From: Prasinococcaceae sp. CCMP 1430
Lineage: Eukaryota > Plantae > Prasinodermophyta
DNA: 24,086 nt
Assembly: GCA_013416795.1 (NCBI GenBank)
Contig: RQSC01000008.1
Location: 170,753 to 194,838, forward strand
Direction of reading: 5' to 3'
Both the position numbers and the translations under genes were made by a program. Position 1 is the stretch's first letter. Every line of letters starts with the position of its first letter. The notes beneath the pieces were generated by a model, which searched no databases, was not told the origin of the DNA, and saw only the letters and a list, made by a program, of their open reading frames with translations. Positions 15,556 to 21,610 of the stretch are shown here, in pieces.

Positions 15556-15922
15556 GCGCGCGCACGCTTCATGCAGCATATGATCCGGTAGGTCAAACGG
15601 CATGCACCCGCTCTTAGTTTTGCCTTTTTTGGGCGGGATTTTCCTCGATTCATTCTTTTTTATGTCTCGTACGCGTGCATCTTGATAGAGGAAGTATTTA
15701 TTTTTATATTTATTTTGTATTTGGTATTTATTATTATTCACGCGGAAAAAGCGCGCGCGCGCACGCGCGCGCGCACACTTCATGCAACGTATGATCCGGT
15801 AGGTCAAACGGCGTGCAACCGCTTTTTGTTTTGCCTTTTGGGGGGGGGATTTTCCTCGATTCATTCTTTTTGATGTGTAGTACGCGTGCATCTTGACGTA
15901 GATATATTTATTTATTATTTTC
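15556..15922. repeat. Diverged 211-bp tandem direct repeat (2 copies), AT-rich, in the ARF/PGAM divergent intergenic region
   Basis: Identical blocks at a 211-bp offset: TATGATCCGGTAGGTCAAACGGC (15579/15790), GGGATTTTCCTCGATTCATTCTTTTT (15635/15846), GTACGCGTGCATCTTGA (15669/15880). Confidence 0.92.
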
Positions 15923-15948
15923 CGGGCGCGCGCGCGCGCGAGTACGGG

Positions 15949-16830
15949 ATGCCCAGTTGGTGCGGCGCGCCAGTTGTCGCGGTGAGCGTGATGCTGGTCG
16001 GAGCGATATCGCGGCCGGTGCGCCGCGCGGCGGCGGCCGCGGACGGCGAGGCCAAGGCCGCGCCGACGCTCGTGCTGATGCGCCACGGCGAGTCGCTGTG
16101 GAACCAGCGCAACCTGTTCACCGGCTGCGTGGACGTGCCGCTGACGGACAACGGCATCGCCGAGGCGATCAAGGCGGGCAAGCGCATCGCCGACGTGCCC
16201 GTCGACGTGATCTACGTGAGCGACCTGATGCGCGCGCAGATGACGGCGCTCATCGCCATGACGCAGCACAACCGCAACAAGGTGCCCGTGGTGGTGCACG
16301 ACGATCCCGAGCTCTCGACGCAGATCTACTCGGAGGCCACCGAGGCCGACACGATCCCCGTCAGGAAGGCGTGGGAGCTCAACGAGCGCATGTACGGCGA
16401 GCTGCAGGGGCTCAACAAGGCCGAGACGGCCGAGAAGTACGGCGACGACCAGGTCAAGGTGTGGAGGCGCTCGTACGACATCCCGCCGCCCAACGGCGAG
16501 TCGCTCGAGATGACCGCCGAGCGCTCCGTCAAATACTTCAAGGAGAACATCGTGCCGCACCTCGAGCGCGGCGAGTCGGTGCTCGTCTCGGCGCACGGCA
16601 ACTCGCTGCGCGCCATCATCATGTACATCGAGAAGCTCTCGCCGGAGGAGGTGGTGCTCCTGGAGCTCTTCACCGGCATCCCGCTCGTGTACGAGCTCCA
16701 AGGGGATGGGCTCAAGCGCATGGGCACGCCGCAGACTGACTGCGCGCCGGGCGTCTACGCGCTGTCGGAGGGGCTTGCAAAGTACAAGGACGCCACCGCC
16801 GCGCTCATGGACCCGAACTACTCGAGCTGA
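15949..16830 (+). CDS. PGAM: 2,3-BPG-dependent phosphoglycerate mutase-like histidine phosphatase (gpmA-type, plant plastid-like)
   Basis: LVLMRHGESLWNQRNLFTGCVDVPLT, LNERMYGELQGLNK, WRRSYDIPPPNGESL, SAHGNSLR. Ala/Arg-rich N-terminal extension. Confidence 0.93.
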   Translation: MPSWCGAPVVAVSVMLVGAISRPVRRAAAAADGEAKAAPTLVLMRHGESLWNQRNLFTGCVDVPLTDNGIAEAIKAGKRIADVPVDVIYVSDLMRAQMTALIAMTQHNRNKVPVVVHDDPELSTQIYSEATEADTIPVRKAWELNERMYGELQGLNKAETAEKYGDDQVKVWRRSYDIPPPNGESLEMTAERSVKYFKENIVPHLERGESVLVSAHGNSLRAIIMYIEKLSPEEVVLLELFTGIPLVYELQGDGLKRMGTPQTDCAPGVYALSEGLAKYKDATAALMDPNYSS

Positions 16831-17131
16831 GCGCGCGCTCGGGGTAGCAGCGGCAGCGAGGGCGGCGGAGTAGTGCGGGCGGCGGATTAAAACCTTACTA
16901 TCATATCTTTTGCACCTCGGGGCAGGGCCGGCCACAGCCCACGGCGCGGGCGCGGGCGCGAGCGCGTGCGCAAGCTGGCAGCGTGCGAGCGCGAGCGCGC
17001 GCGAACAGTGAGCGTGCTCGGCCTTACAAAAATAGACGCGCAATCGGCGTCGCTGTGCATTGTCCGTGCGTTGCGCCGCACCGCGCCGCGCCGCCTATCC
17101 CCTCCTCCCCCGCCACGCTGCGCGCGTCTGC

Positions 17132-18790
17132 TCACGCCGCCACGTTGGTGCCGGCCTCGAGCTTGGGGACGTCGGCGTCCGCGGGGAACATGCCGGCGGC
17201 GGTCATGTCGCACGTGTCGAGGTCTTCTACCACCAGTGCAGCGCCCTGCGCGAGGAACTCCTCGGGAGAGGTCGAGTTGCTGCTGGTGGGCGTGATGATG
17301 CACGGCATGCCCGCGGACACCGCGGCCTTGAGGCCCACGATGGAGTCCTCCACGACGACGCAGCGCTCGCGCGGCACGCCCAGCCGCTCGCGCGCGAGGT
17401 TGTAGATGAGCGGGTCCGGCTTCTTCTTGGAGACGTCGTCGCCCGCCAGGATCACGTCGAAGCGCGCGAGGCGGTCGGGCTTGACGATTGAGTTGACCAC
17501 CTTGTCGAAGCCAGCGCGCGTGGCGGCCGAGCAAATGGCAACCGCCACGTCGCCCCTATCGAGCGCCTCATCCATCAGCCGCAGCACGCCCGGCCGCGCC
17601 TCGGCGGTGGTTTCGACGAGCTCCTTGTAGCAGACCGTCTTCTGGTCCTGGAGGCGGTCCACCAGCGCGGAGCGGTCCTCCTCGCTCTCGGGTGCCGCGC
17701 CCTCGACGCTGGAGGGCCACTGCGCGCGCTCCGTGTTGAAGTAGTACTTCATCTTGGGCTTGCCGCCGCCCACCGTGTTCTGCAGGACGTCGTAGTACTC
17801 GACGGTCCACTCGACCTGCTCGGTGCCGTCCAGCTTGAGCTCGAAGTGCTTGAACGACGCGTTGTACGCCAGCCGGTGGAGCTCCTCGGTCTCGACGATG
17901 ACGCCGTCGCAGTCGAAGAGCAGCGCGAACTTGGGCAGCGGCGGCACCGCGCCGACTTCGGTGAGCCACGCCGTGTGCGTGGGGAAGGGGTCGGCCTCGC
18001 CGTCGGCGACGGCCTTCTTGGTGAGGCTGTGGAAGTACCCGTTGCGCCACTCGAGCTCCTTGACGGCCGTCGGGAAGTGCGCCACCGAGCGCGCGTACGC
18101 GCGCAGCCGCACGGCGACGTCGGGCTTGAAGGTGACGCCCTGCGCCGCGCAGCCCGCGGCGAGCTCGTCGATGAGCTGCGTGACCTCGTCGGTGTGCTGG
18201 GACTCCACGTCGCCCACGGTGGCGCCCGGGTGGCGCGCGCCCACCAGCATGAACGCCGAGATCCAGATGAGCTTCTCGAGCATGCTGGCCTTGAACACGT
18301 CGCCCTCGAGCACGTGGCACGACATGCCGCCGGCGTTGAGGCGCGCGGCGAGCGCCGGCGCCCACTTGCCGCAGGCGGCGGTGAGGCCGTCCGGGTCCGT
18401 GTCGGTGATGCCGTCGGTGGGCGCGTCGCCCAGCTTGGCCACCGCCATGTAGATGAGCGCCTGGGTGTTGTCGCCGAGGCCCTTGGCGTCGAGGTACGGC
18501 TGCAGCATCCCGTTCTGCAGGAAGACGAGGTCCTCGCGGCGCCCCTCGGGCACCGACTCGATGATGCCGTCGAGGGCGTCGTTGCGCGTGCACACGAAGA
18601 TGGGCCCCGCCGGGGCGTCGGCGGGGAACGCGTCGCCGCGCCGCAGCACGACGTCGTCGCCGTTGCCCATCTGCTCGAGCGCCGTGCCGATGCGCCCGCC
18701 GCCGATGATGATGGCGCTCGGCACGGCGCCTTCTGCCGCACCCGCGCTCGCGGTGGCCGGCGGCGCCAGCACGCACGGCGTGCAGGCCAA
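17132..18790 (-). CDS. Fusion protein: ketopantoate-reductase (PanE/ApbA)-like Rossmann domain + CbbY-like HAD phosphatase; 5' end missing (no ATG)
   Basis: Domain 1 (~18720-17950): IIIGGGRIG, VCTRND, FLQNGM, LEKLIW, KELEWRNGY. Domain 2 (~17930-17132): FDCDGVIVETE, CSAA, KKKPDPLIY, VEDSIVG. One continuous ORF; TGTAA on the minus strand at 17024-17028. Confidence 0.85.
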   Translation of the reverse strand: MACTPCVLAPPATASAGAAEGAVPSAIIIGGGRIGTALEQMGNGDDVVLRRGDAFPADAPAGPIFVCTRNDALDGIIESVPEGRREDLVFLQNGMLQPYLDAKGLGDNTQALIYMAVAKLGDAPTDGITDTDPDGLTAACGKWAPALAARLNAGGMSCHVLEGDVFKASMLEKLIWISAFMLVGARHPGATVGDVESQHTDEVTQLIDELAAGCAAQGVTFKPDVAVRLRAYARSVAHFPTAVKELEWRNGYFHSLTKKAVADGEADPFPTHTAWLTEVGAVPPLPKFALLFDCDGVIVETEELHRLAYNASFKHFELKLDGTEQVEWTVEYYDVLQNTVGGGKPKMKYYFNTERAQWPSSVEGAAPESEEDRSALVDRLQDQKTVCYKELVETTAEARPGVLRLMDEALDRGDVAVAICSAATRAGFDKVVNSIVKPDRLARFDVILAGDDVSKKKPDPLIYNLARERLGVPRERCVVVEDSIVGLKAAVSAGMPCIITPTSSNSTSPEEFLAQGAALVVEDLDTCDMTAAGMFPADADVPKLEAGTNVAA

Positions 18791-19748
18791 CGGGGGCTAC
18801 AAACGCCCCAAGGACAGGCCGGTGCCGGTGCCCACCAAGGCGCCCTTCGAGCCCATCGTGCCCACCGAGGCGCCGGTGAGGCCCGTCCCAGTGCCCACGA
18901 AGGCGCCCATCGAGCCCTTCATCCCCACGGACACACCAACTCGCCGCCCGACGCCATCGCCGACTAAGTCGCCCTCGGTGGCACCTACGCCCAGGCCGAC
19001 GCCGCGCCCGACGCCGTCGCCCACCAAGTCGCCGACGAGGCGCCCCACGCCCTCGCCCACCAAGTCGCCCACGGCGTTCCCGACCATCCCGGTCCTGACG
19101 GAGTCCCCGACCAAGTCGCCGACGAGGCGCCCCACGCCCTCGCCCACCAAGTCGCCGACCGAGTCGCCCACGCCCAGGCCGACGCCGCGCCCGACGCCGT
19201 CGCCGACGAAGTCGCCGACGAGGCGCCCGACGCCCTCGCCGACCAAGTCGCCAACGGCGTTCCCGACCATCCCCATCGTGACCGACTCGCCCACCAAGTC
19301 GCCGACGCGCCGCCCCACGCCGTCGCCCACCAAGTCGCCGACCAAGTCGCCGACGCCCAGGCCGACGCCGCGCCCGACGCCCTCGCCGACCAAGTCGCCG
19401 ACGAGGCGCCCGACGCCCTCGCCGACCAAGTCGCCAACGGCGTTCCCGACCATCCCCATCGTGACCGACTCGCCCACCAAGTCGCCGACGCGCCGCCCCA
19501 CGCCGTCGCCCACCAAGTCGCCGACCAAGTCGCCGACGCCCAGGCCGACGCCGCGCCCGACGCCCTCGCCGACCAAGTCGCCCACGCGTCGCCCTGTGCC
19601 AGCGCCGACCAAGGCGCCTTTCGAGCCCATCGTGCCGACGAAGGCTCCCATCGAGCCTTTCAGCCCGACCGATGCACCCACGAGGGCACCCAAGCCTACG
19701 CCCTCCCCGCGCCGCCACGGTGGCCGCTACCGTCGCATGCTCTTCTAG
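18781..19748 (+). CDS. Pro/Thr/Ser-rich tandem-repeat (mucin/HRGP-like) protein, 3' part; N-terminus not visible
   Basis: PTKSPTRRPTPS repeats with a 183-bp (61-aa) super-period (anchor GCGTTCC at 19074, 19257, 19440). Stop TAG at 19746-19748; TGTAA at 19806. Confidence 0.7.
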
Positions 19749-19805
19749 ACTTAACTCGCTGTGTACCAACAACAGGCGCCTGCCCCGGCTGCCCAGTGAG
19801 AGAAG

Positions 19806-19898
19806 TGTAATTGTCAACCTACCTGCAGACACGACACCAAGACCGCTGCGCGCGCACTCATCGCGAGGAGTGTTTATGTGTACATGCGTAGTATTACA
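19806..19898. promoter_or_regulatory. Convergent TGTAA polyadenylation-signal-like motifs (+ at 19806-19810; - at 19894-19898)
   Basis: Each lies 58-80 nt after the stop of its gene. TGTAA also follows RecD2 (8839), the HAD fusion (17024, minus) and the 21753-22725 gene (22760). UGUAA is the established chlorophyte poly(A) signal. Confidence 0.6.
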
Positions 19899-19977: not shown

Positions 19978-20466
19978 TCACGCGACCTCCACGGACGCCC
20001 AGAGGCGTTCACCAAAGCCCACGCCGTTGTGCGTGAGGCGGAAGTACACGCTGTACGGCCCGCTCGGCGCGCTCGGCGGCGTGAGCATAGCTCGCGCCTC
20101 GGCGCGGCCGCGCGGCAGGAGCACCACGCGCGCTCCTCTTACCAGCACGCGGCCGTCCGAGTCGGCATCCTCGCGCACGAGCTCCACGTCGGCCACGCCG
20201 CTCCCGCCGCCGTCGCCGCCACTCGAGCGCCGCGGCCACGGGCTGCGCCCTTCGGACTCAACGCACTGACTGAGCAGCCACTTCTTCTCGACGGGCCTCC
20301 CGCCTTGCACCTGGATGCCATCGGGGAGCGTGAGGTCGTCAAGAAAGGCCCCGCCGAGCGCCTCCGAGGGCGCCCCCTCGCTATCCGGCCGCCGCGCGGC
20401 ACTGGCCTCGGCGTGGCCCAGCGGCTCCGACGCCGTCGCCGGGGCCACCCGTGCGAGCGTGCTCAT
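19978..20466 (-). CDS. NBR1-FW / ILRUN-type Ig-like domain protein; start at 20466 tentative, may be 5'-truncated
   Basis: AFLDDLTLPDGIQVQGGRPVEKKWLL...W...LTPPSAPSGPYSVYFRLTHNGVGFGERLWASVEV resembles the recalled FW domain pattern (FV.DVT.PDG...F.K.W...W...AP...G.Y...WRL....FG.R.W..I.V). Confidence 0.7.
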   Translation of the reverse strand: MSTLARVAPATASEPLGHAEASAARRPDSEGAPSEALGGAFLDDLTLPDGIQVQGGRPVEKKWLLSQCVESEGRSPWPRRSSGGDGGGSGVADVELVREDADSDGRVLVRGARVVLLPRGRAEARAMLTPPSAPSGPYSVYFRLTHNGVGFGERLWASVEVA

Positions 20467-20529
20467 CGGACCCCATTCCTCGGGCAGGAGGTGCGTGGGC
20501 TCGACGCACGGTGGCGGCAGCGGGCTCGC

Positions 20530-21610
20530 GGCCGTGAGGTGCGGCGCGCGCGCGCGGTGCCCGGACGCGGCGTCGCCCGCGACGGCCGACCCCGCGCTGC
20601 GCTGGCTCGAGCGGCCGCCGCTGCCGCCCAAGGCGGAGGTGTACGCGCACATCAAGAACTTCGCCAGCGCGGACGGCCGCGTCGCCACCGGCGTGTTCGC
20701 GTCCACCATGTGCGCGCTCTTCGGCGCGTACGCGCTCGCGCACCAGGGGCTGCTGGCGGGCGGTGCCGCCGGCGCCATGGCCGTCGCGGGAGGCCTCGTC
20801 GCGGGCGTGCTGCTCAAGATACGCACCTTCATGTGCTTCCACGACATGGCGCACAAGTCGTTCTGGCCGACGACGAGCGCGACGGGCCGGCTGGCCAACC
20901 GCGTGTTCGGCGCGCTGTCGGGCGCGCTGTGCTACACGTCCTTCACGCGCTGGGACAGGATCCACAACAACCACCACCGCATCTCCAACGACCTCGACGA
21001 GAACCAGCACGCGCAGACGGCGCCCTGGAGCACCCGCGAGCGCGCCGAGAAGACGCAGGCCACGCGCAACCTCTTCGACGCCAAGTACAACCAGTGGGTG
21101 CAGTGGGTGGTGGGGCCGTGGTTCGTCTTCTTCGTCGTGAACCGCAAGTGCCCGCCGCTGGAGAACCTGCTCTGGGCGGCGCCGCTCGCGGCGTGCTACG
21201 CGGTGGGGGGCGCGAAGCTGCTCGCGTTCGAGTTCGCCGTCAGCTACGTGACGGCCTTCCTGGGCATGTGCCTGTTCCACGCGCAGCACACCTTCGACGG
21301 CGTGTACAAGCGGCGTAAGGACGAGTGGGACTACTACGAGAACGGCATGCTCGGCTCGTCCATGCTGCTCATCCCGGAGGCGCTCAAGCCCTTCACGCTG
21401 GGGATCGAGTACCACCACATACACCACCTCTCGGTGGGCGTGCCCTCGTACAAGCTGCGCGCGTGCCACGAGGCCGGCGACGAAAAGGGCCTCTGGGATG
21501 CCGTGCCCACGCTGCCGCTGAGCTCCATCCCCGCCACCATGCCGTACGCCGTGTGGGACGAGGACGACCAGAAGTTCCTCAGCGTGCCGGAGAGCCGCGC
21601 GAGGGACTGA
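20530..21610 (+). CDS. Membrane fatty-acid desaturase, bacterial Des/DesA-like; start unresolved (only upstream in-frame ATG is 20315, antisense to the FW gene)
   Basis: Three His boxes: HDMAH, HNNHH, HHIHH. RTFMCFHD, LFHAQHTF and GIEYHHIHHLSVGVPSYKLRACH resemble Bacillus Des-type enzymes. No intron seen. Confidence 0.88.

What the first reader, a model, noticed from the sequence alone, without database searches (positions are those of the whole stretch)
17132..18790. Rosetta-stone fusion: uncharacterised ketopantoate-reductase-like domain + CbbY-like HAD phosphatase
Seen: one ORF in which a Rossmann/PanE-like domain (GxGxxG, QNG, and Lys and Glu at positions corresponding to PanE catalytic residues) ends at TAWLTEVGAV. 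After a short PPLPK linker, an intact HAD domain begins (DxD, S, K and ED motifs). From recall, the first half closely resembles the Arabidopsis plastid protein of unknown function At1g16080, the second resembles the CbbY-like At4g39970, and these are separate genes in plants. Established: CbbY removes the Rubisco inhibitor xylulose-1,5-bisphosphate. Inference: the fusion suggests a coupled NAD(P)H-dependent reduction and dephosphorylation of a plastid sugar-phosphate by-product. That would be a candidate metabolite-repair module and a functional lead for an orphan plant protein. The join falls at clean domain boundaries, which favours a real fusion.
Basis: partly seen in the sequence, partly recalled or inferred. 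Interest (0 to 1): 0.72.

Follow-up and report, generated by a model that had tools for sequence, protein, structure and literature searches.

The report
Reductase fused to Rubisco-repair phosphatase
A marine green alga makes one protein that joins a conserved chloroplast enzyme of unknown function (the counterpart of Arabidopsis At1g16080) to a phosphatase of the kind that destroys a Rubisco-poisoning sugar, which suggests the orphan enzyme works in the same clean-up pathway.

Summary
The minus-strand ORF 17132-18790 encodes two intact domains joined by a five-residue linker (PPLPK). Residues ~24-282 have no Pfam family, but the model has the ketopantoate-reductase (PanE) fold (Z 21). They are 57-59% identical over their whole length to Arabidopsis At1g16080, a plastid protein with no published function that I could find. 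Residues 288-530 are a CbbY-type HAD phosphatase with all four catalytic motifs. In the tree this half falls on the CbbYB (At4g39970) side of the family.

The fusion is real. RNA-library contigs from three studies cross the linker. Both halves are under purifying selection. The same fusion occurs in related marine algae and in Euglena longa transcripts. A second lineage carries the two domains in the opposite order, so the fusion arose at least twice.

In Arabidopsis, At1g16080 ranks 20th among genes co-expressed with CbbYA, next to CbbYB. A chlorarachniophyte fuses the same HAD clade to a Rubisco small-subunit domain.

The functional link is well supported. The chemistry is not tested: my lead is reduction of a Rubisco by-product followed by dephosphorylation. 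The gene's 5' end is unresolved. The scan holds no earlier finding of this elsewhere.

The parts
17132..18721 (-). Conserved coding region of the fusion gene (aa 24-552 plus stop codon 17132-17134). The ORF stays open up to 18790, but no valid start codon lies there.
   Evidence: ORF list. Alignment to fusion orthologues and to stand-alone homologues. A 1645-nt contig in run X1 covers 17081-18725 with 0 mismatches.
17945..18721 (-). PanE-fold NAD(P)H-reductase-like domain (aa 24-282), orthologue of Arabidopsis At1g16080. Key residues: GGGRIG 30-35, N93, K173, E245.
   Evidence: AF2 model pLDDT 91. Foldseek and VIA-align top hits are all ketopantoate reductases, Z 18-21, rmsd ~3 A over ~240 residues. 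57-59% identity to P0024. dN/dS 0.26 against the 85% orthologue.
17930..17944 (-). Five-residue linker PPLPK (aa 283-287).
   Evidence: Stand-alone N-domain proteins end just before it, and the HAD core starts just after it. It is identical in the 85% orthologue.
17201..17929 (-). CbbY-type HAD-IA phosphatase domain (aa 288-530) with motifs I-IV intact.
   Evidence: Pfam and NCBIfam. PDB 4uav (AtCbbYA) E 1e-46 and Rhodobacter CbbY E 9e-25. Tree placement. dN/dS 0.18.
17135..17200 (-). Poorly conserved C-terminal tail (aa 531-552).
   Evidence: Alignment. pLDDT below 50 for the last residues.
17081..17131 (-). 3' UTR. Transcript contigs end at 17081 and 17083 in two independent data sets.
   Evidence: read-laying table 8, runs X1 and X3.
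18722..18796 (-). Open but unconserved stretch upstream of the conserved region. It is either intron, 5' UTR or a poorly conserved leader. AG dinucleotides that could be splice acceptors lie at 18734-18733 and 18718-17. RNA contigs stop at 18725 and 18730.
   Evidence: Sequence. Read laying. Comparison with the relative's donor- and acceptor-like sites in L077/L078.

Best explanation
This is a genuine, expressed nuclear gene of a high-GC marine green alga. The gene encodes a bifunctional protein that is probably plastid-targeted.

The N-terminal domain is a PanE-fold carbonyl reductase, probably NADPH-dependent, orthologous to the uncharacterised Arabidopsis stromal protein At1g16080. A five-residue linker joins it to a CbbY-type HAD phosphatase from the sister clade of land-plant CbbYB (At4g39970). 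CbbYB removes the C1 phosphate of the Rubisco inhibitor xylulose-1,5-bisphosphate (XuBP).

Shown here: both domains are intact, constrained and co-transcribed, and the pairing has arisen at least twice.

Inferred: the two activities serve one pathway, most likely consecutive steps in disposing of a phosphorylated Rubisco side-product. My lead is NADPH-dependent reduction of the diketone 2,3-pentodiulose-1,5-bisphosphate (PDBP), or a related keto-bisphosphate, to XuBP or RuBP. The HAD domain would then convert XuBP to xylulose-5-phosphate. This follows the reductase-then-phosphatase logic of MtlD and of Dunaliella GPDH (DsGPDH).

Confidence by tier:
- Real fusion of these two families: about 0.95.
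- Functional coupling in plastid sugar-phosphate or Rubisco damage control: about 0.55.
- The specific PDBP route: about 0.15.
For: Integrity of the two domains:
- Domain identities and intact motifs.
- dN/dS is 0.26 for the N domain and 0.18 for the HAD domain, and the linker is identical, against the 85% orthologue.

Expression:
- RNA-library contigs cross 17900-17980: X1 17081-18725 with 0 mismatches, X3 17083-18085, X6 17645-18290.
- X3 and X6 are recorded metatranscriptomes from other studies.

Recurrence of the fusion:
- The same N-to-HAD fusion occurs at 64-86% identity in independent Tara, JGI and Logan assemblies, and at 55% in Euglena longa transcripts.
- Some relatives are a single ATG-initiated ORF with a transit-peptide-like extension.
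- The opposite order, HAD-to-N, occurs in P0008 and P0009.
- An AU test rejects one clade for all fusions (p 0.0003).

Links to CbbY and Rubisco:
- In the ATTED list for AtCBBYA, AT4G39970 ranks 18 and AT1G16080 ranks 20.
- At1g16080 is recorded as plastid-located.
- The RbcS(PF00101)-HAD fusion in Gymnochlora belongs to the same HAD clade.
- AtCbbYA and AtCbbYB are XuBP phosphatases, and their joint loss impairs photosynthesis (PMC10212915).

Structure and precedent:
- The full-length AF2 model has pTM 0.84, which suggests a defined packing of the two domains.
- MtlD and DsGPDH, both reductase-plus-HAD bifunctional enzymes, appear among the weaker fold matches.
Against: - There is no biochemical evidence for any substrate.
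- PanE-family enzymes act on 2-oxo acids, not sugar bisphosphates, and the PanE substrate-binding positions N180 and S244 have no counterpart here.
- Homologues of the N domain are common in non-photosynthetic Myxococcota. None of the 76 prokaryotic loci has a CbbY-like neighbour, so the ancestral role need not involve Rubisco.
- Co-expression with CbbYA is shared by most photosynthesis genes.
- PDBP already has a reported route through CA1Pase, the 2-carboxyarabinitol-1-phosphate phosphatase (PMC9833046).
- The HAD clade in question showed no land-plant members in the hits listed, so its substrate could differ from that of AtCbbYB.
- The XuBP-binding signature residues were not checked.
- The N-terminus, and therefore the targeting of this particular protein, is unresolved.
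Confidence: 0.55

Rival explanations
1. The two domains are independent housekeeping or repair enzymes of the stroma. They were fused only for joint expression and targeting, with no shared substrate or sequential catalysis.
For: The linker is very short and neither domain has lost anything. Stand-alone versions are the rule in plants and most algae. Bacterial homologues of the N domain show no link to HAD genes.
Against: The same pairing arose independently in the opposite order. It is retained from prasinodermophyte-like algae to euglenids. Such recurrence is unusual for unrelated activities. Full-length model pTM is 0.84.
Confidence: 0.2
2. It is a biosynthetic reductase-phosphatase like Acinetobacter MtlD or Dunaliella GPDH. 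It would reduce a ketose or keto-acid phosphate and then dephosphorylate it, releasing a free polyol or hydroxy-acid such as a compatible solute.
For: The design is the same as MtlD (7ocp) and DsGPDH (6iuy). Both have related reductase folds that appear at Z about 13. NCBIfam bifunc_MtlD matches the HAD part at E 3.5e-11. Marine algae need osmolytes.
Against: The HAD half is nested in the CbbY family next to proven XuBP phosphatases, and in the same clade as an RbcS fusion. The N-domain orthologue is conserved in land plants and co-expressed with photosynthesis genes. The best fold matches are 2-oxo-acid reductases, not polyol-phosphate dehydrogenases.
Confidence: 0.13
3. The PanE-like domain is a non-catalytic NADP(H)-binding sensor. 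It would tune the phosphatase to the stromal redox state.
For: The glycine loop and a conserved Arg pair after strand 2 (aa 50-51) suggest nucleotide binding. The PanE substrate-binding region around S244 is missing.
Against: The catalytic-position Asn, Lys and Glu are invariant across the whole family, including the stand-alone proteins. Conservation of the stand-alone protein in plants argues for a function of its own.
Confidence: 0.06
4. The N domain is the plastid ketopantoate reductase of pantothenate synthesis, and its fusion to a phosphatase is incidental.
For: The best structural matches are ketopantoate reductases, and the catalytic triad positions align.
Against: It fails the Pfam ApbA and ApbA_C thresholds. 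The pantoate-binding positions are not conserved. Arabidopsis already has a putative KPR, AT5G34780 (PMC8145761). Nothing links pantoate to a CbbY phosphatase.
Confidence: 0.04
5. It is an assembly or gene-model chimera of two adjacent genes.
For: The 5' end is unresolved, and P0001, a 512-aa model of this protein in the protein collection, starts at an internal Met.
Against: The frame is continuous with no stop. Transcript contigs from three studies cross the junction. The same fusion is found in many independent assemblies and in a cultured euglenid's transcriptome.
Confidence: 0.02

Closest known systems
CbbY xylulose-1,5-bisphosphate phosphatases (Rhodobacter CbbY 4uar/4uat; Arabidopsis CbbYA At3g48420, 4uav; CbbYB At4g39970)
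   Same: HAD-IA core plus cap with all four catalytic motifs. Sequence hits to 4uav (E 1e-46) and RsCbbY (E 9e-25). In the tree it falls on the CbbYB side of the family.
   Different: It is fused to a reductase-like domain. It belongs to an algal sister clade (Chlamydomonas Cre14.g623000, Mesostigma, Ostreococcus, Guillardia and others) that showed no land-plant members in the listed hits. Substrate and XuBP-signature residues were not tested.
Arabidopsis At1g16080 ('nuclear protein', C0Z2K9) and its orthologues in green plants and algae
   Same: 57-59% identity over the whole domain, the same start and end, and the same invariant residues. It is a plastid protein.
   Different: It is stand-alone in plants (about 305-313 aa with transit peptide). 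No function has been published that I could find.
Ketopantoate reductase PanE/ApbA and D-mandelate dehydrogenase (e.g. 2ofp, 5hws, 5x20)
   Same: The fold matches (Z 18-21). The glycine loop and the Asn, Lys and Glu at catalytic positions are present.
   Different: Only 13-19% identity. It falls below the Pfam thresholds. The segment holding PanE S244 and residue N180 has no counterpart, so the substrate is probably different.
Bifunctional reductase-HAD phosphatases: Acinetobacter MtlD (7ocp) and Dunaliella salina GPDH (6iuy)
   Same: One polypeptide combines a Rossmann plus helical-domain reductase of the same broad superfamily with a HAD phosphatase. Reduction of a keto-phosphate is followed by dephosphorylation.
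   Different: Different reductase and HAD subfamilies, and a different domain order (HAD first). Those enzymes make osmolytes. The resemblance is in how it works, not in family membership.
Gymnochlora sp. RbcS-HAD fusion (P0259)
   Same: The same HAD clade, also fused to a partner.
   Different: The partner is a Rubisco small-subunit domain, not the reductase.

Membership tests
HAD superfamily, subfamily IA | Four catalytic motifs (DxD nucleophile; S/T; K; E/D-D) and Pfam HAD models above threshold | tested here: met
   FDCDG 292-296, CSAAT 420-424, KKKPDP 455-460, EDS 481-483. PF00702 76.5 bits against a cut-off of 26.4. PF13419 68.6 bits against 23.8.
CbbY-type XuBP phosphatase | Phylogenetic placement with characterised CbbY proteins | tested here: met
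   Best PDB sequence hits are AtCbbYA and RsCbbY. In the tree, the window's clade (SH-aLRT 94) is sister to the clade holding the land-plant CbbYB-type cluster (joint support 88), with CbbYA as outgroup. The CbbYB label of P0329 is inferred from its 158 bits to 4uav, against 494 bits for the CbbYA cluster.
CbbY-type XuBP phosphatase | The 13 XuBP-binding signature residues defined on RsCbbY | not tested
   The list of residues was not available. The paper that defines them is not held. PMC10212915 gives only counts.
CbbY-type XuBP phosphatase | Selective hydrolysis of XuBP to Xu5P | not testable with these tools
   Needs an enzyme assay.
PanE/ApbA ketopantoate reductase (PF02558 + PF08546) | Match to the Pfam family models above their gathering scores | tested here: not met
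   ApbA_C scores only 13.7 bits against a cut-off of 22.7 (E 0.08). The N-terminal ApbA model gives no hit. A profile search against PDB sequences finds nothing significant. hhalign to E. coli PanE gives probability 0.2.
PanE/ApbA ketopantoate reductase (PF02558 + PF08546) | Two-domain fold: Rossmann domain plus a helical domain like the 6PGDH C-terminal domain | tested here: met
   Z 18-21, rmsd about 3 A over 236-246 of 262 residues. The next families fall to Z about 14. Foldseek TM 0.6-0.7.
PanE/ApbA ketopantoate reductase (PF02558 + PF08546) | Catalytic Asn98, Lys176 and Glu256 (E. coli numbering) | tested here: inconclusive
   A global pairwise alignment puts N93, K173 and E245 opposite them, and all three are invariant in the family. 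The alignment score is low, and no residue-level structural alignment was available.
PanE/ApbA ketopantoate reductase (PF02558 + PF08546) | Pantoate-binding Asn180 and Ser244 | tested here: not met
   Neither position has an aligned counterpart. The segment around S244 is absent.
At1g16080 orthogroup | Full-length similarity and placement inside the eukaryotic clade | tested here: met
   57-70% identity to plant and algal members with matching ends. The eukaryote clade has support 99 and includes the window and Arabidopsis.

The most novel reading that the evidence does not exclude
The At1g16080 family, conserved from prasinodermophytes to angiosperms, is a missing enzyme of Rubisco metabolite-damage repair. 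It would be an NADPH-dependent reductase that converts an oxygenase- or misprotonation-derived keto-bisphosphate (PDBP or 3-keto-arabinitol-1,5-bisphosphate) into a CbbY substrate or back into RuBP. Reductase and CbbY phosphatase would then form a two-step repair module present in all green plants.
Probability: 0.15. Interest if true: 0.85.

Novelty: new variant of a known kind. Interest (0 to 1): 0.64.

Why it matters
Inhibition of Rubisco by its own misfire products limits photosynthesis. The only dedicated clean-up enzymes known are CbbY/XuBPase and CA1Pase, and no enzyme is assigned to several of the by-products. At1g16080 is an unstudied stromal protein found across green plants. A domain fusion that arose twice, together with co-expression, places it beside the XuBP phosphatases. 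That turns an orphan protein into a directly testable candidate for a new repair step, which is relevant to efforts to improve Rubisco performance in crops.

Tried and rejected
1. A candidate first exon at 19861-19823 (ATG...CAG|GTAGGT) spliced to an AG at 18798-97 gives a plausible transit-peptide-like leader. However, run X1, which covers the gene body at depth 178, has zero depth over 19682-19895. I do not adopt this exon.

2. A colinear 5' UTR. RNA contigs stop at 18725 (X1) and 18730 (X3), and no in-frame ATG lies upstream of the glycine loop.
- In the 85% relative, the collection's 'M' is a TTG chosen by the gene caller.
- There, a donor-like ...CCGGCAG|GTGAAC and an acceptor-like CCCCACGCAG|TC would restore the family's 'PAV' consensus.
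- Yet three JGI contigs of about 1.7-1.9 kb keep that stretch.
- The start remains unresolved.

3. Exact-product look-ups for the window's own protein found nothing.

4. Gene neighbourhoods of 76 prokaryotic homologues show no conserved informative partner and no HAD gene.

5. Sequence-level links to PanE are not significant by profile against PDB or by hhalign.

6. Literature. Nine papers mention At1g16080 and none addresses its function. There are no hits for 'Euglena longa' with CbbY or for the Chlamydomonas identifiers. The Bracher 2015 paper is not held.

7. The 30-letter consensus starts of two loose ends of the high-depth contigs at 18742 and 18844 do not occur elsewhere in the window.
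Full report
**What is there.** The minus strand carries one open frame from 18790 to the stop at 17134-17132, in a window of about 70% G+C.
- Pfam sees only the C-terminal half: Hydrolase E 5e-21, HAD_2 E 9e-19, Hydrolase_like E 6e-7, over aa 289-525.
- For the N-terminal half Pfam gives only a sub-threshold ApbA_C match (E 0.08, 13.7 bits against a cut-off of 22.7).
- NCBIfam places the C half in HAD-IA and the beta-phosphoglucomutase-like subfamily.

**The C-terminal half.**
- Against PDB sequences the best hits are Arabidopsis At3g48420 (4uav, E 1e-46, 163 bits) and Rhodobacter CbbY (E 9e-25).
- PMC10212915 shows that At3g48420 (CbbYA) and At4g39970 (CbbYB) both hydrolyse XuBP, and that the double mutant is impaired.
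- In the 1.8-billion-protein representative search, a land-plant 'CBBY-like' cluster (P0391) scores 162 bits to the window. P0391 scores 494 bits to 4uav, so it is CbbYA.
- A second land-plant cluster (P0329) scores 214 bits to the window. It scores only 158 bits to 4uav, so I take it to be the CbbYB type.
- Stand-alone green-algal, cryptophyte and chlorarachniophyte proteins score 300-355 bits. These include Chlamydomonas Cre14.g623000, Mesostigma, Ostreococcus, Guillardia, Teleaulax and Partenskyella.
- In a maximum-likelihood tree rooted on CbbYA, the window lies in a 42-row clade (SH-aLRT 94). That clade is sister to the 9-row clade holding P0329, Mesotaenium and Chloropicon (joint support 88).
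- No land plant appeared among the 120 best hits listed, even with the Mesostigma protein as query.
- So 'CbbYB-like' is right in the broad sense, but the domain belongs to an algal sister clade.

**The N-terminal half.**
- It is 57-59% identical over its whole length to land-plant proteins of about 305-313 aa annotated 'nuclear protein' or uncharacterised.
- P0024 is At1g16080: its residues 44/45 onward match the mature N-terminal peptides reported for AT1G16080.1, a plastid protein, in PMC11546460.
- None of the nine papers that mention the gene deals with its function. P0024 has no Pfam family at E 0.01 or better.
- An AlphaFold model from a 25-sequence alignment is confident (pLDDT 91, pTM 0.87).
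- Foldseek's top 50 matches are all ketopantoate reductases or D-mandelate dehydrogenases.
- VIA-align gives Z 18-21 (rmsd about 3 A, about 240 residues) for these. It drops to about 14 for opine, glycerol-3-phosphate and mannitol-1-phosphate dehydrogenases.
- A global alignment to E. coli PanE, taken from NC_000913.3, puts G30, N93, K173 and E245 opposite G7, N98, K176 and E256. PanE N180 and S244 have no counterpart.
- Profile methods do not reach significance.
- The domain therefore has the PanE fold and probably its chemistry, but it is not a PanE-family member by sequence criteria and probably has another substrate.
- From general knowledge of Rossmann folds, the conserved Arg pair just after strand 2 suggests NADPH.

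**Is the fusion real?**
- Run X1 has a 1645-nt contig covering 17081-18725 with no mismatch. X1 is from the same organism as the best DNA holders, and its RNA label is a guess.
- The recorded metatranscriptomes X3 and X6, from two other studies, have contigs 17083-18085, 18056-18730 and 17645-18290. All of these cross or abut the linker at 17930-17944.
- Against the 85%-identical orthologue, dN/dS is 0.26 for the N domain and 0.18 for the HAD domain, and the linker is unchanged.
- The same N-to-HAD architecture occurs in P0002-P0006 (64-86% identity; Tara, JGI and Logan assemblies) and in two Euglena longa transcripts (55%).
- The 85% relative also keeps the neighbouring phosphoglycerate-mutase gene.
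- In a 64% relative the gene is a single ATG-initiated ORF with an extension of about 75 residues rich in Arg, Ser and Thr.
- The full-length model has pLDDT 90 and pTM 0.84.

**Recurrence.**
- P0008 and P0009 carry the domains in the opposite order, HAD then PanE-like. P0009 represents 95 sequences, including a 410-kb contig and an NCBI assembly. It starts with a signal-peptide-like N-terminus.
- In both domain trees these sit apart from the N-to-HAD fusions.
- An AU test rejects a single clade of all fusions (p 0.0003). It does not reject one origin for the prasinodermophyte-like and euglenid N-to-HAD fusions (p 0.077).
- The fusion therefore arose at least twice.

**Other links to Rubisco.**
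- In the ATTED list of genes co-expressed with AtCBBYA, AT4G39970 is rank 18 (z 8.2) and AT1G16080 is rank 20 (z 8.14). This is suggestive but not specific, because the list is dominated by photosynthesis genes.
- In the chlorarachniophyte Gymnochlora, a member of the same HAD clade is fused to a Rubisco small-subunit domain (PF00101, E 7.5e-33).

**Distribution of the N domain.**
- It occurs in land plants, green algae, chlorarachniophytes, Paulinella and euglenids.
- Among prokaryotes, 76 loci were found. Most are Myxococcota (Nannocystaceae, Plesiocystis, Enhygromyxa). Four are cyanobacterial MAG sequences that form the sister group of the eukaryotic clade and sit among genuine cyanobacterial genes.
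- None has a CbbY-like neighbour, and no neighbour is conserved.
- This weakens any claim that the family's role is intrinsically about Rubisco.

**Mechanism.**
- Shown: two intact, constrained catalytic-type domains in one transcript, and a repeated, independent pairing.
- Inferred: they act in one pathway.
- Known bifunctional enzymes of this design reduce a keto-phosphate and then remove the phosphate. Examples are MtlD and Dunaliella GPDH, both visible as weaker fold matches.
- The CbbY substrate XuBP is a 2-keto-pentose bisphosphate. The oxygenase by-product PDBP is the corresponding 2,3-diketone, and reducing its C3 carbonyl would give XuBP or RuBP.
- My lead is therefore a PDBP (or related keto-bisphosphate) reductase feeding the phosphatase. 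I give that specific route only about 0.15.
- The rivals are incidental co-targeting, polyol synthesis, a redox-sensing role, and ketopantoate reductase. Arabidopsis already has a putative KPR, AT5G34780.

**Unresolved 5' end.**
- There is no in-frame ATG between the upstream stop (18799-97) and the glycine loop.
- The stretch just before M41 is nevertheless coding: 14 of 15 residues are identical to the relative, with dN/dS 0.11.
- RNA contigs end at 18725 and 18730.
- The relative has convincing donor- and acceptor-like sites whose use would restore the family's consensus. But JGI contigs keep that stretch.
- A candidate exon at 19861-19823 has no coverage in X1.
- Plastid targeting of this particular protein is therefore inferred from its relatives, not shown.

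**Organism.**
- The published 69.8% G+C (PMC7455551) fits the window. I did not verify the identity otherwise.
- A word search of earlier findings for this fusion returned nothing.

Noticed in passing
window 18742-19806 (tandem array 18942-19618): A Pro/Thr-rich repeat lies immediately upstream of, and overlapping, the 5' end of the fusion gene. The unit is 183 bp, 3.7 copies, 91% matches. It sits in a plus-strand ORF (18453-19748) that matches Pfam 'PT disordered repeat'. Contig depth there is 10^3-10^5 in organism-A runs, against 178 for the fusion gene. Many contigs fit two places, and one joins at 18742 to 58 letters whose 30-letter consensus start is not found in the window. Highly expressed paralogues therefore exist elsewhere. 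Run X2 also covers the unique 3' end, 19675-19806.
   Followed up: partly
window 15886-16830 (+): A canonical 2,3-bisphosphoglycerate-dependent phosphoglycerate mutase (NCBIfam PRK01112, 324 bits against a cut-off of 320) lies convergent with the fusion gene. The same neighbour, a His_Phos_1 gene, follows the fusion gene in the 85% relative (L077-L079).
   Followed up: partly
P0259 (Gymnochlora sp. CCMP2014 transcript): A signal-peptide-like leader, then a Rubisco small-subunit domain (aa 77-184), then a CbbY-type HAD domain of the same clade as the window's. This is a second kind of natural fusion tying this phosphatase clade to Rubisco.
   Followed up: partly
L001-L076 (e.g. L017 Plesiocystis pacifica, L024 Enhygromyxa salina, L013 Synechococcus MAG): Stand-alone homologues of the At1g16080-type domain (33-47% identity, about 240-260 aa) are widespread in Myxococcota and present in a few cyanobacterial MAGs. 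The cyanobacterial ones are sister to the eukaryotic clade. No neighbour is conserved.
   Followed up: partly
P0316 (NCBI CAK9079364.1, 909 aa): A protein annotated as a voltage-gated calcium-channel subunit carries an Ion_trans domain (aa 320-572) and a partial At1g16080-type domain at its C-terminus (aa 732-909). It may be a merged gene model.
   Followed up: no
P0015 (NCBI, 867 aa): Two tandem CbbY-type HAD domains in one protein, each preceded by copies of a module of about 40 residues (DISIPYDAT...). The organism was not identified.
   Followed up: no
window 20315-21610 (+): An ORF with a fatty-acid desaturase domain (PF00487, E 5e-21), the next gene beyond the repeat.
   Followed up: no
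L078 104-250 / L087 104-: In the 85% relative, the only ATG upstream of the glycine loop opens an out-of-frame upstream ORF of about 46 codons that overlaps the start of the conserved coding region.
   Followed up: no
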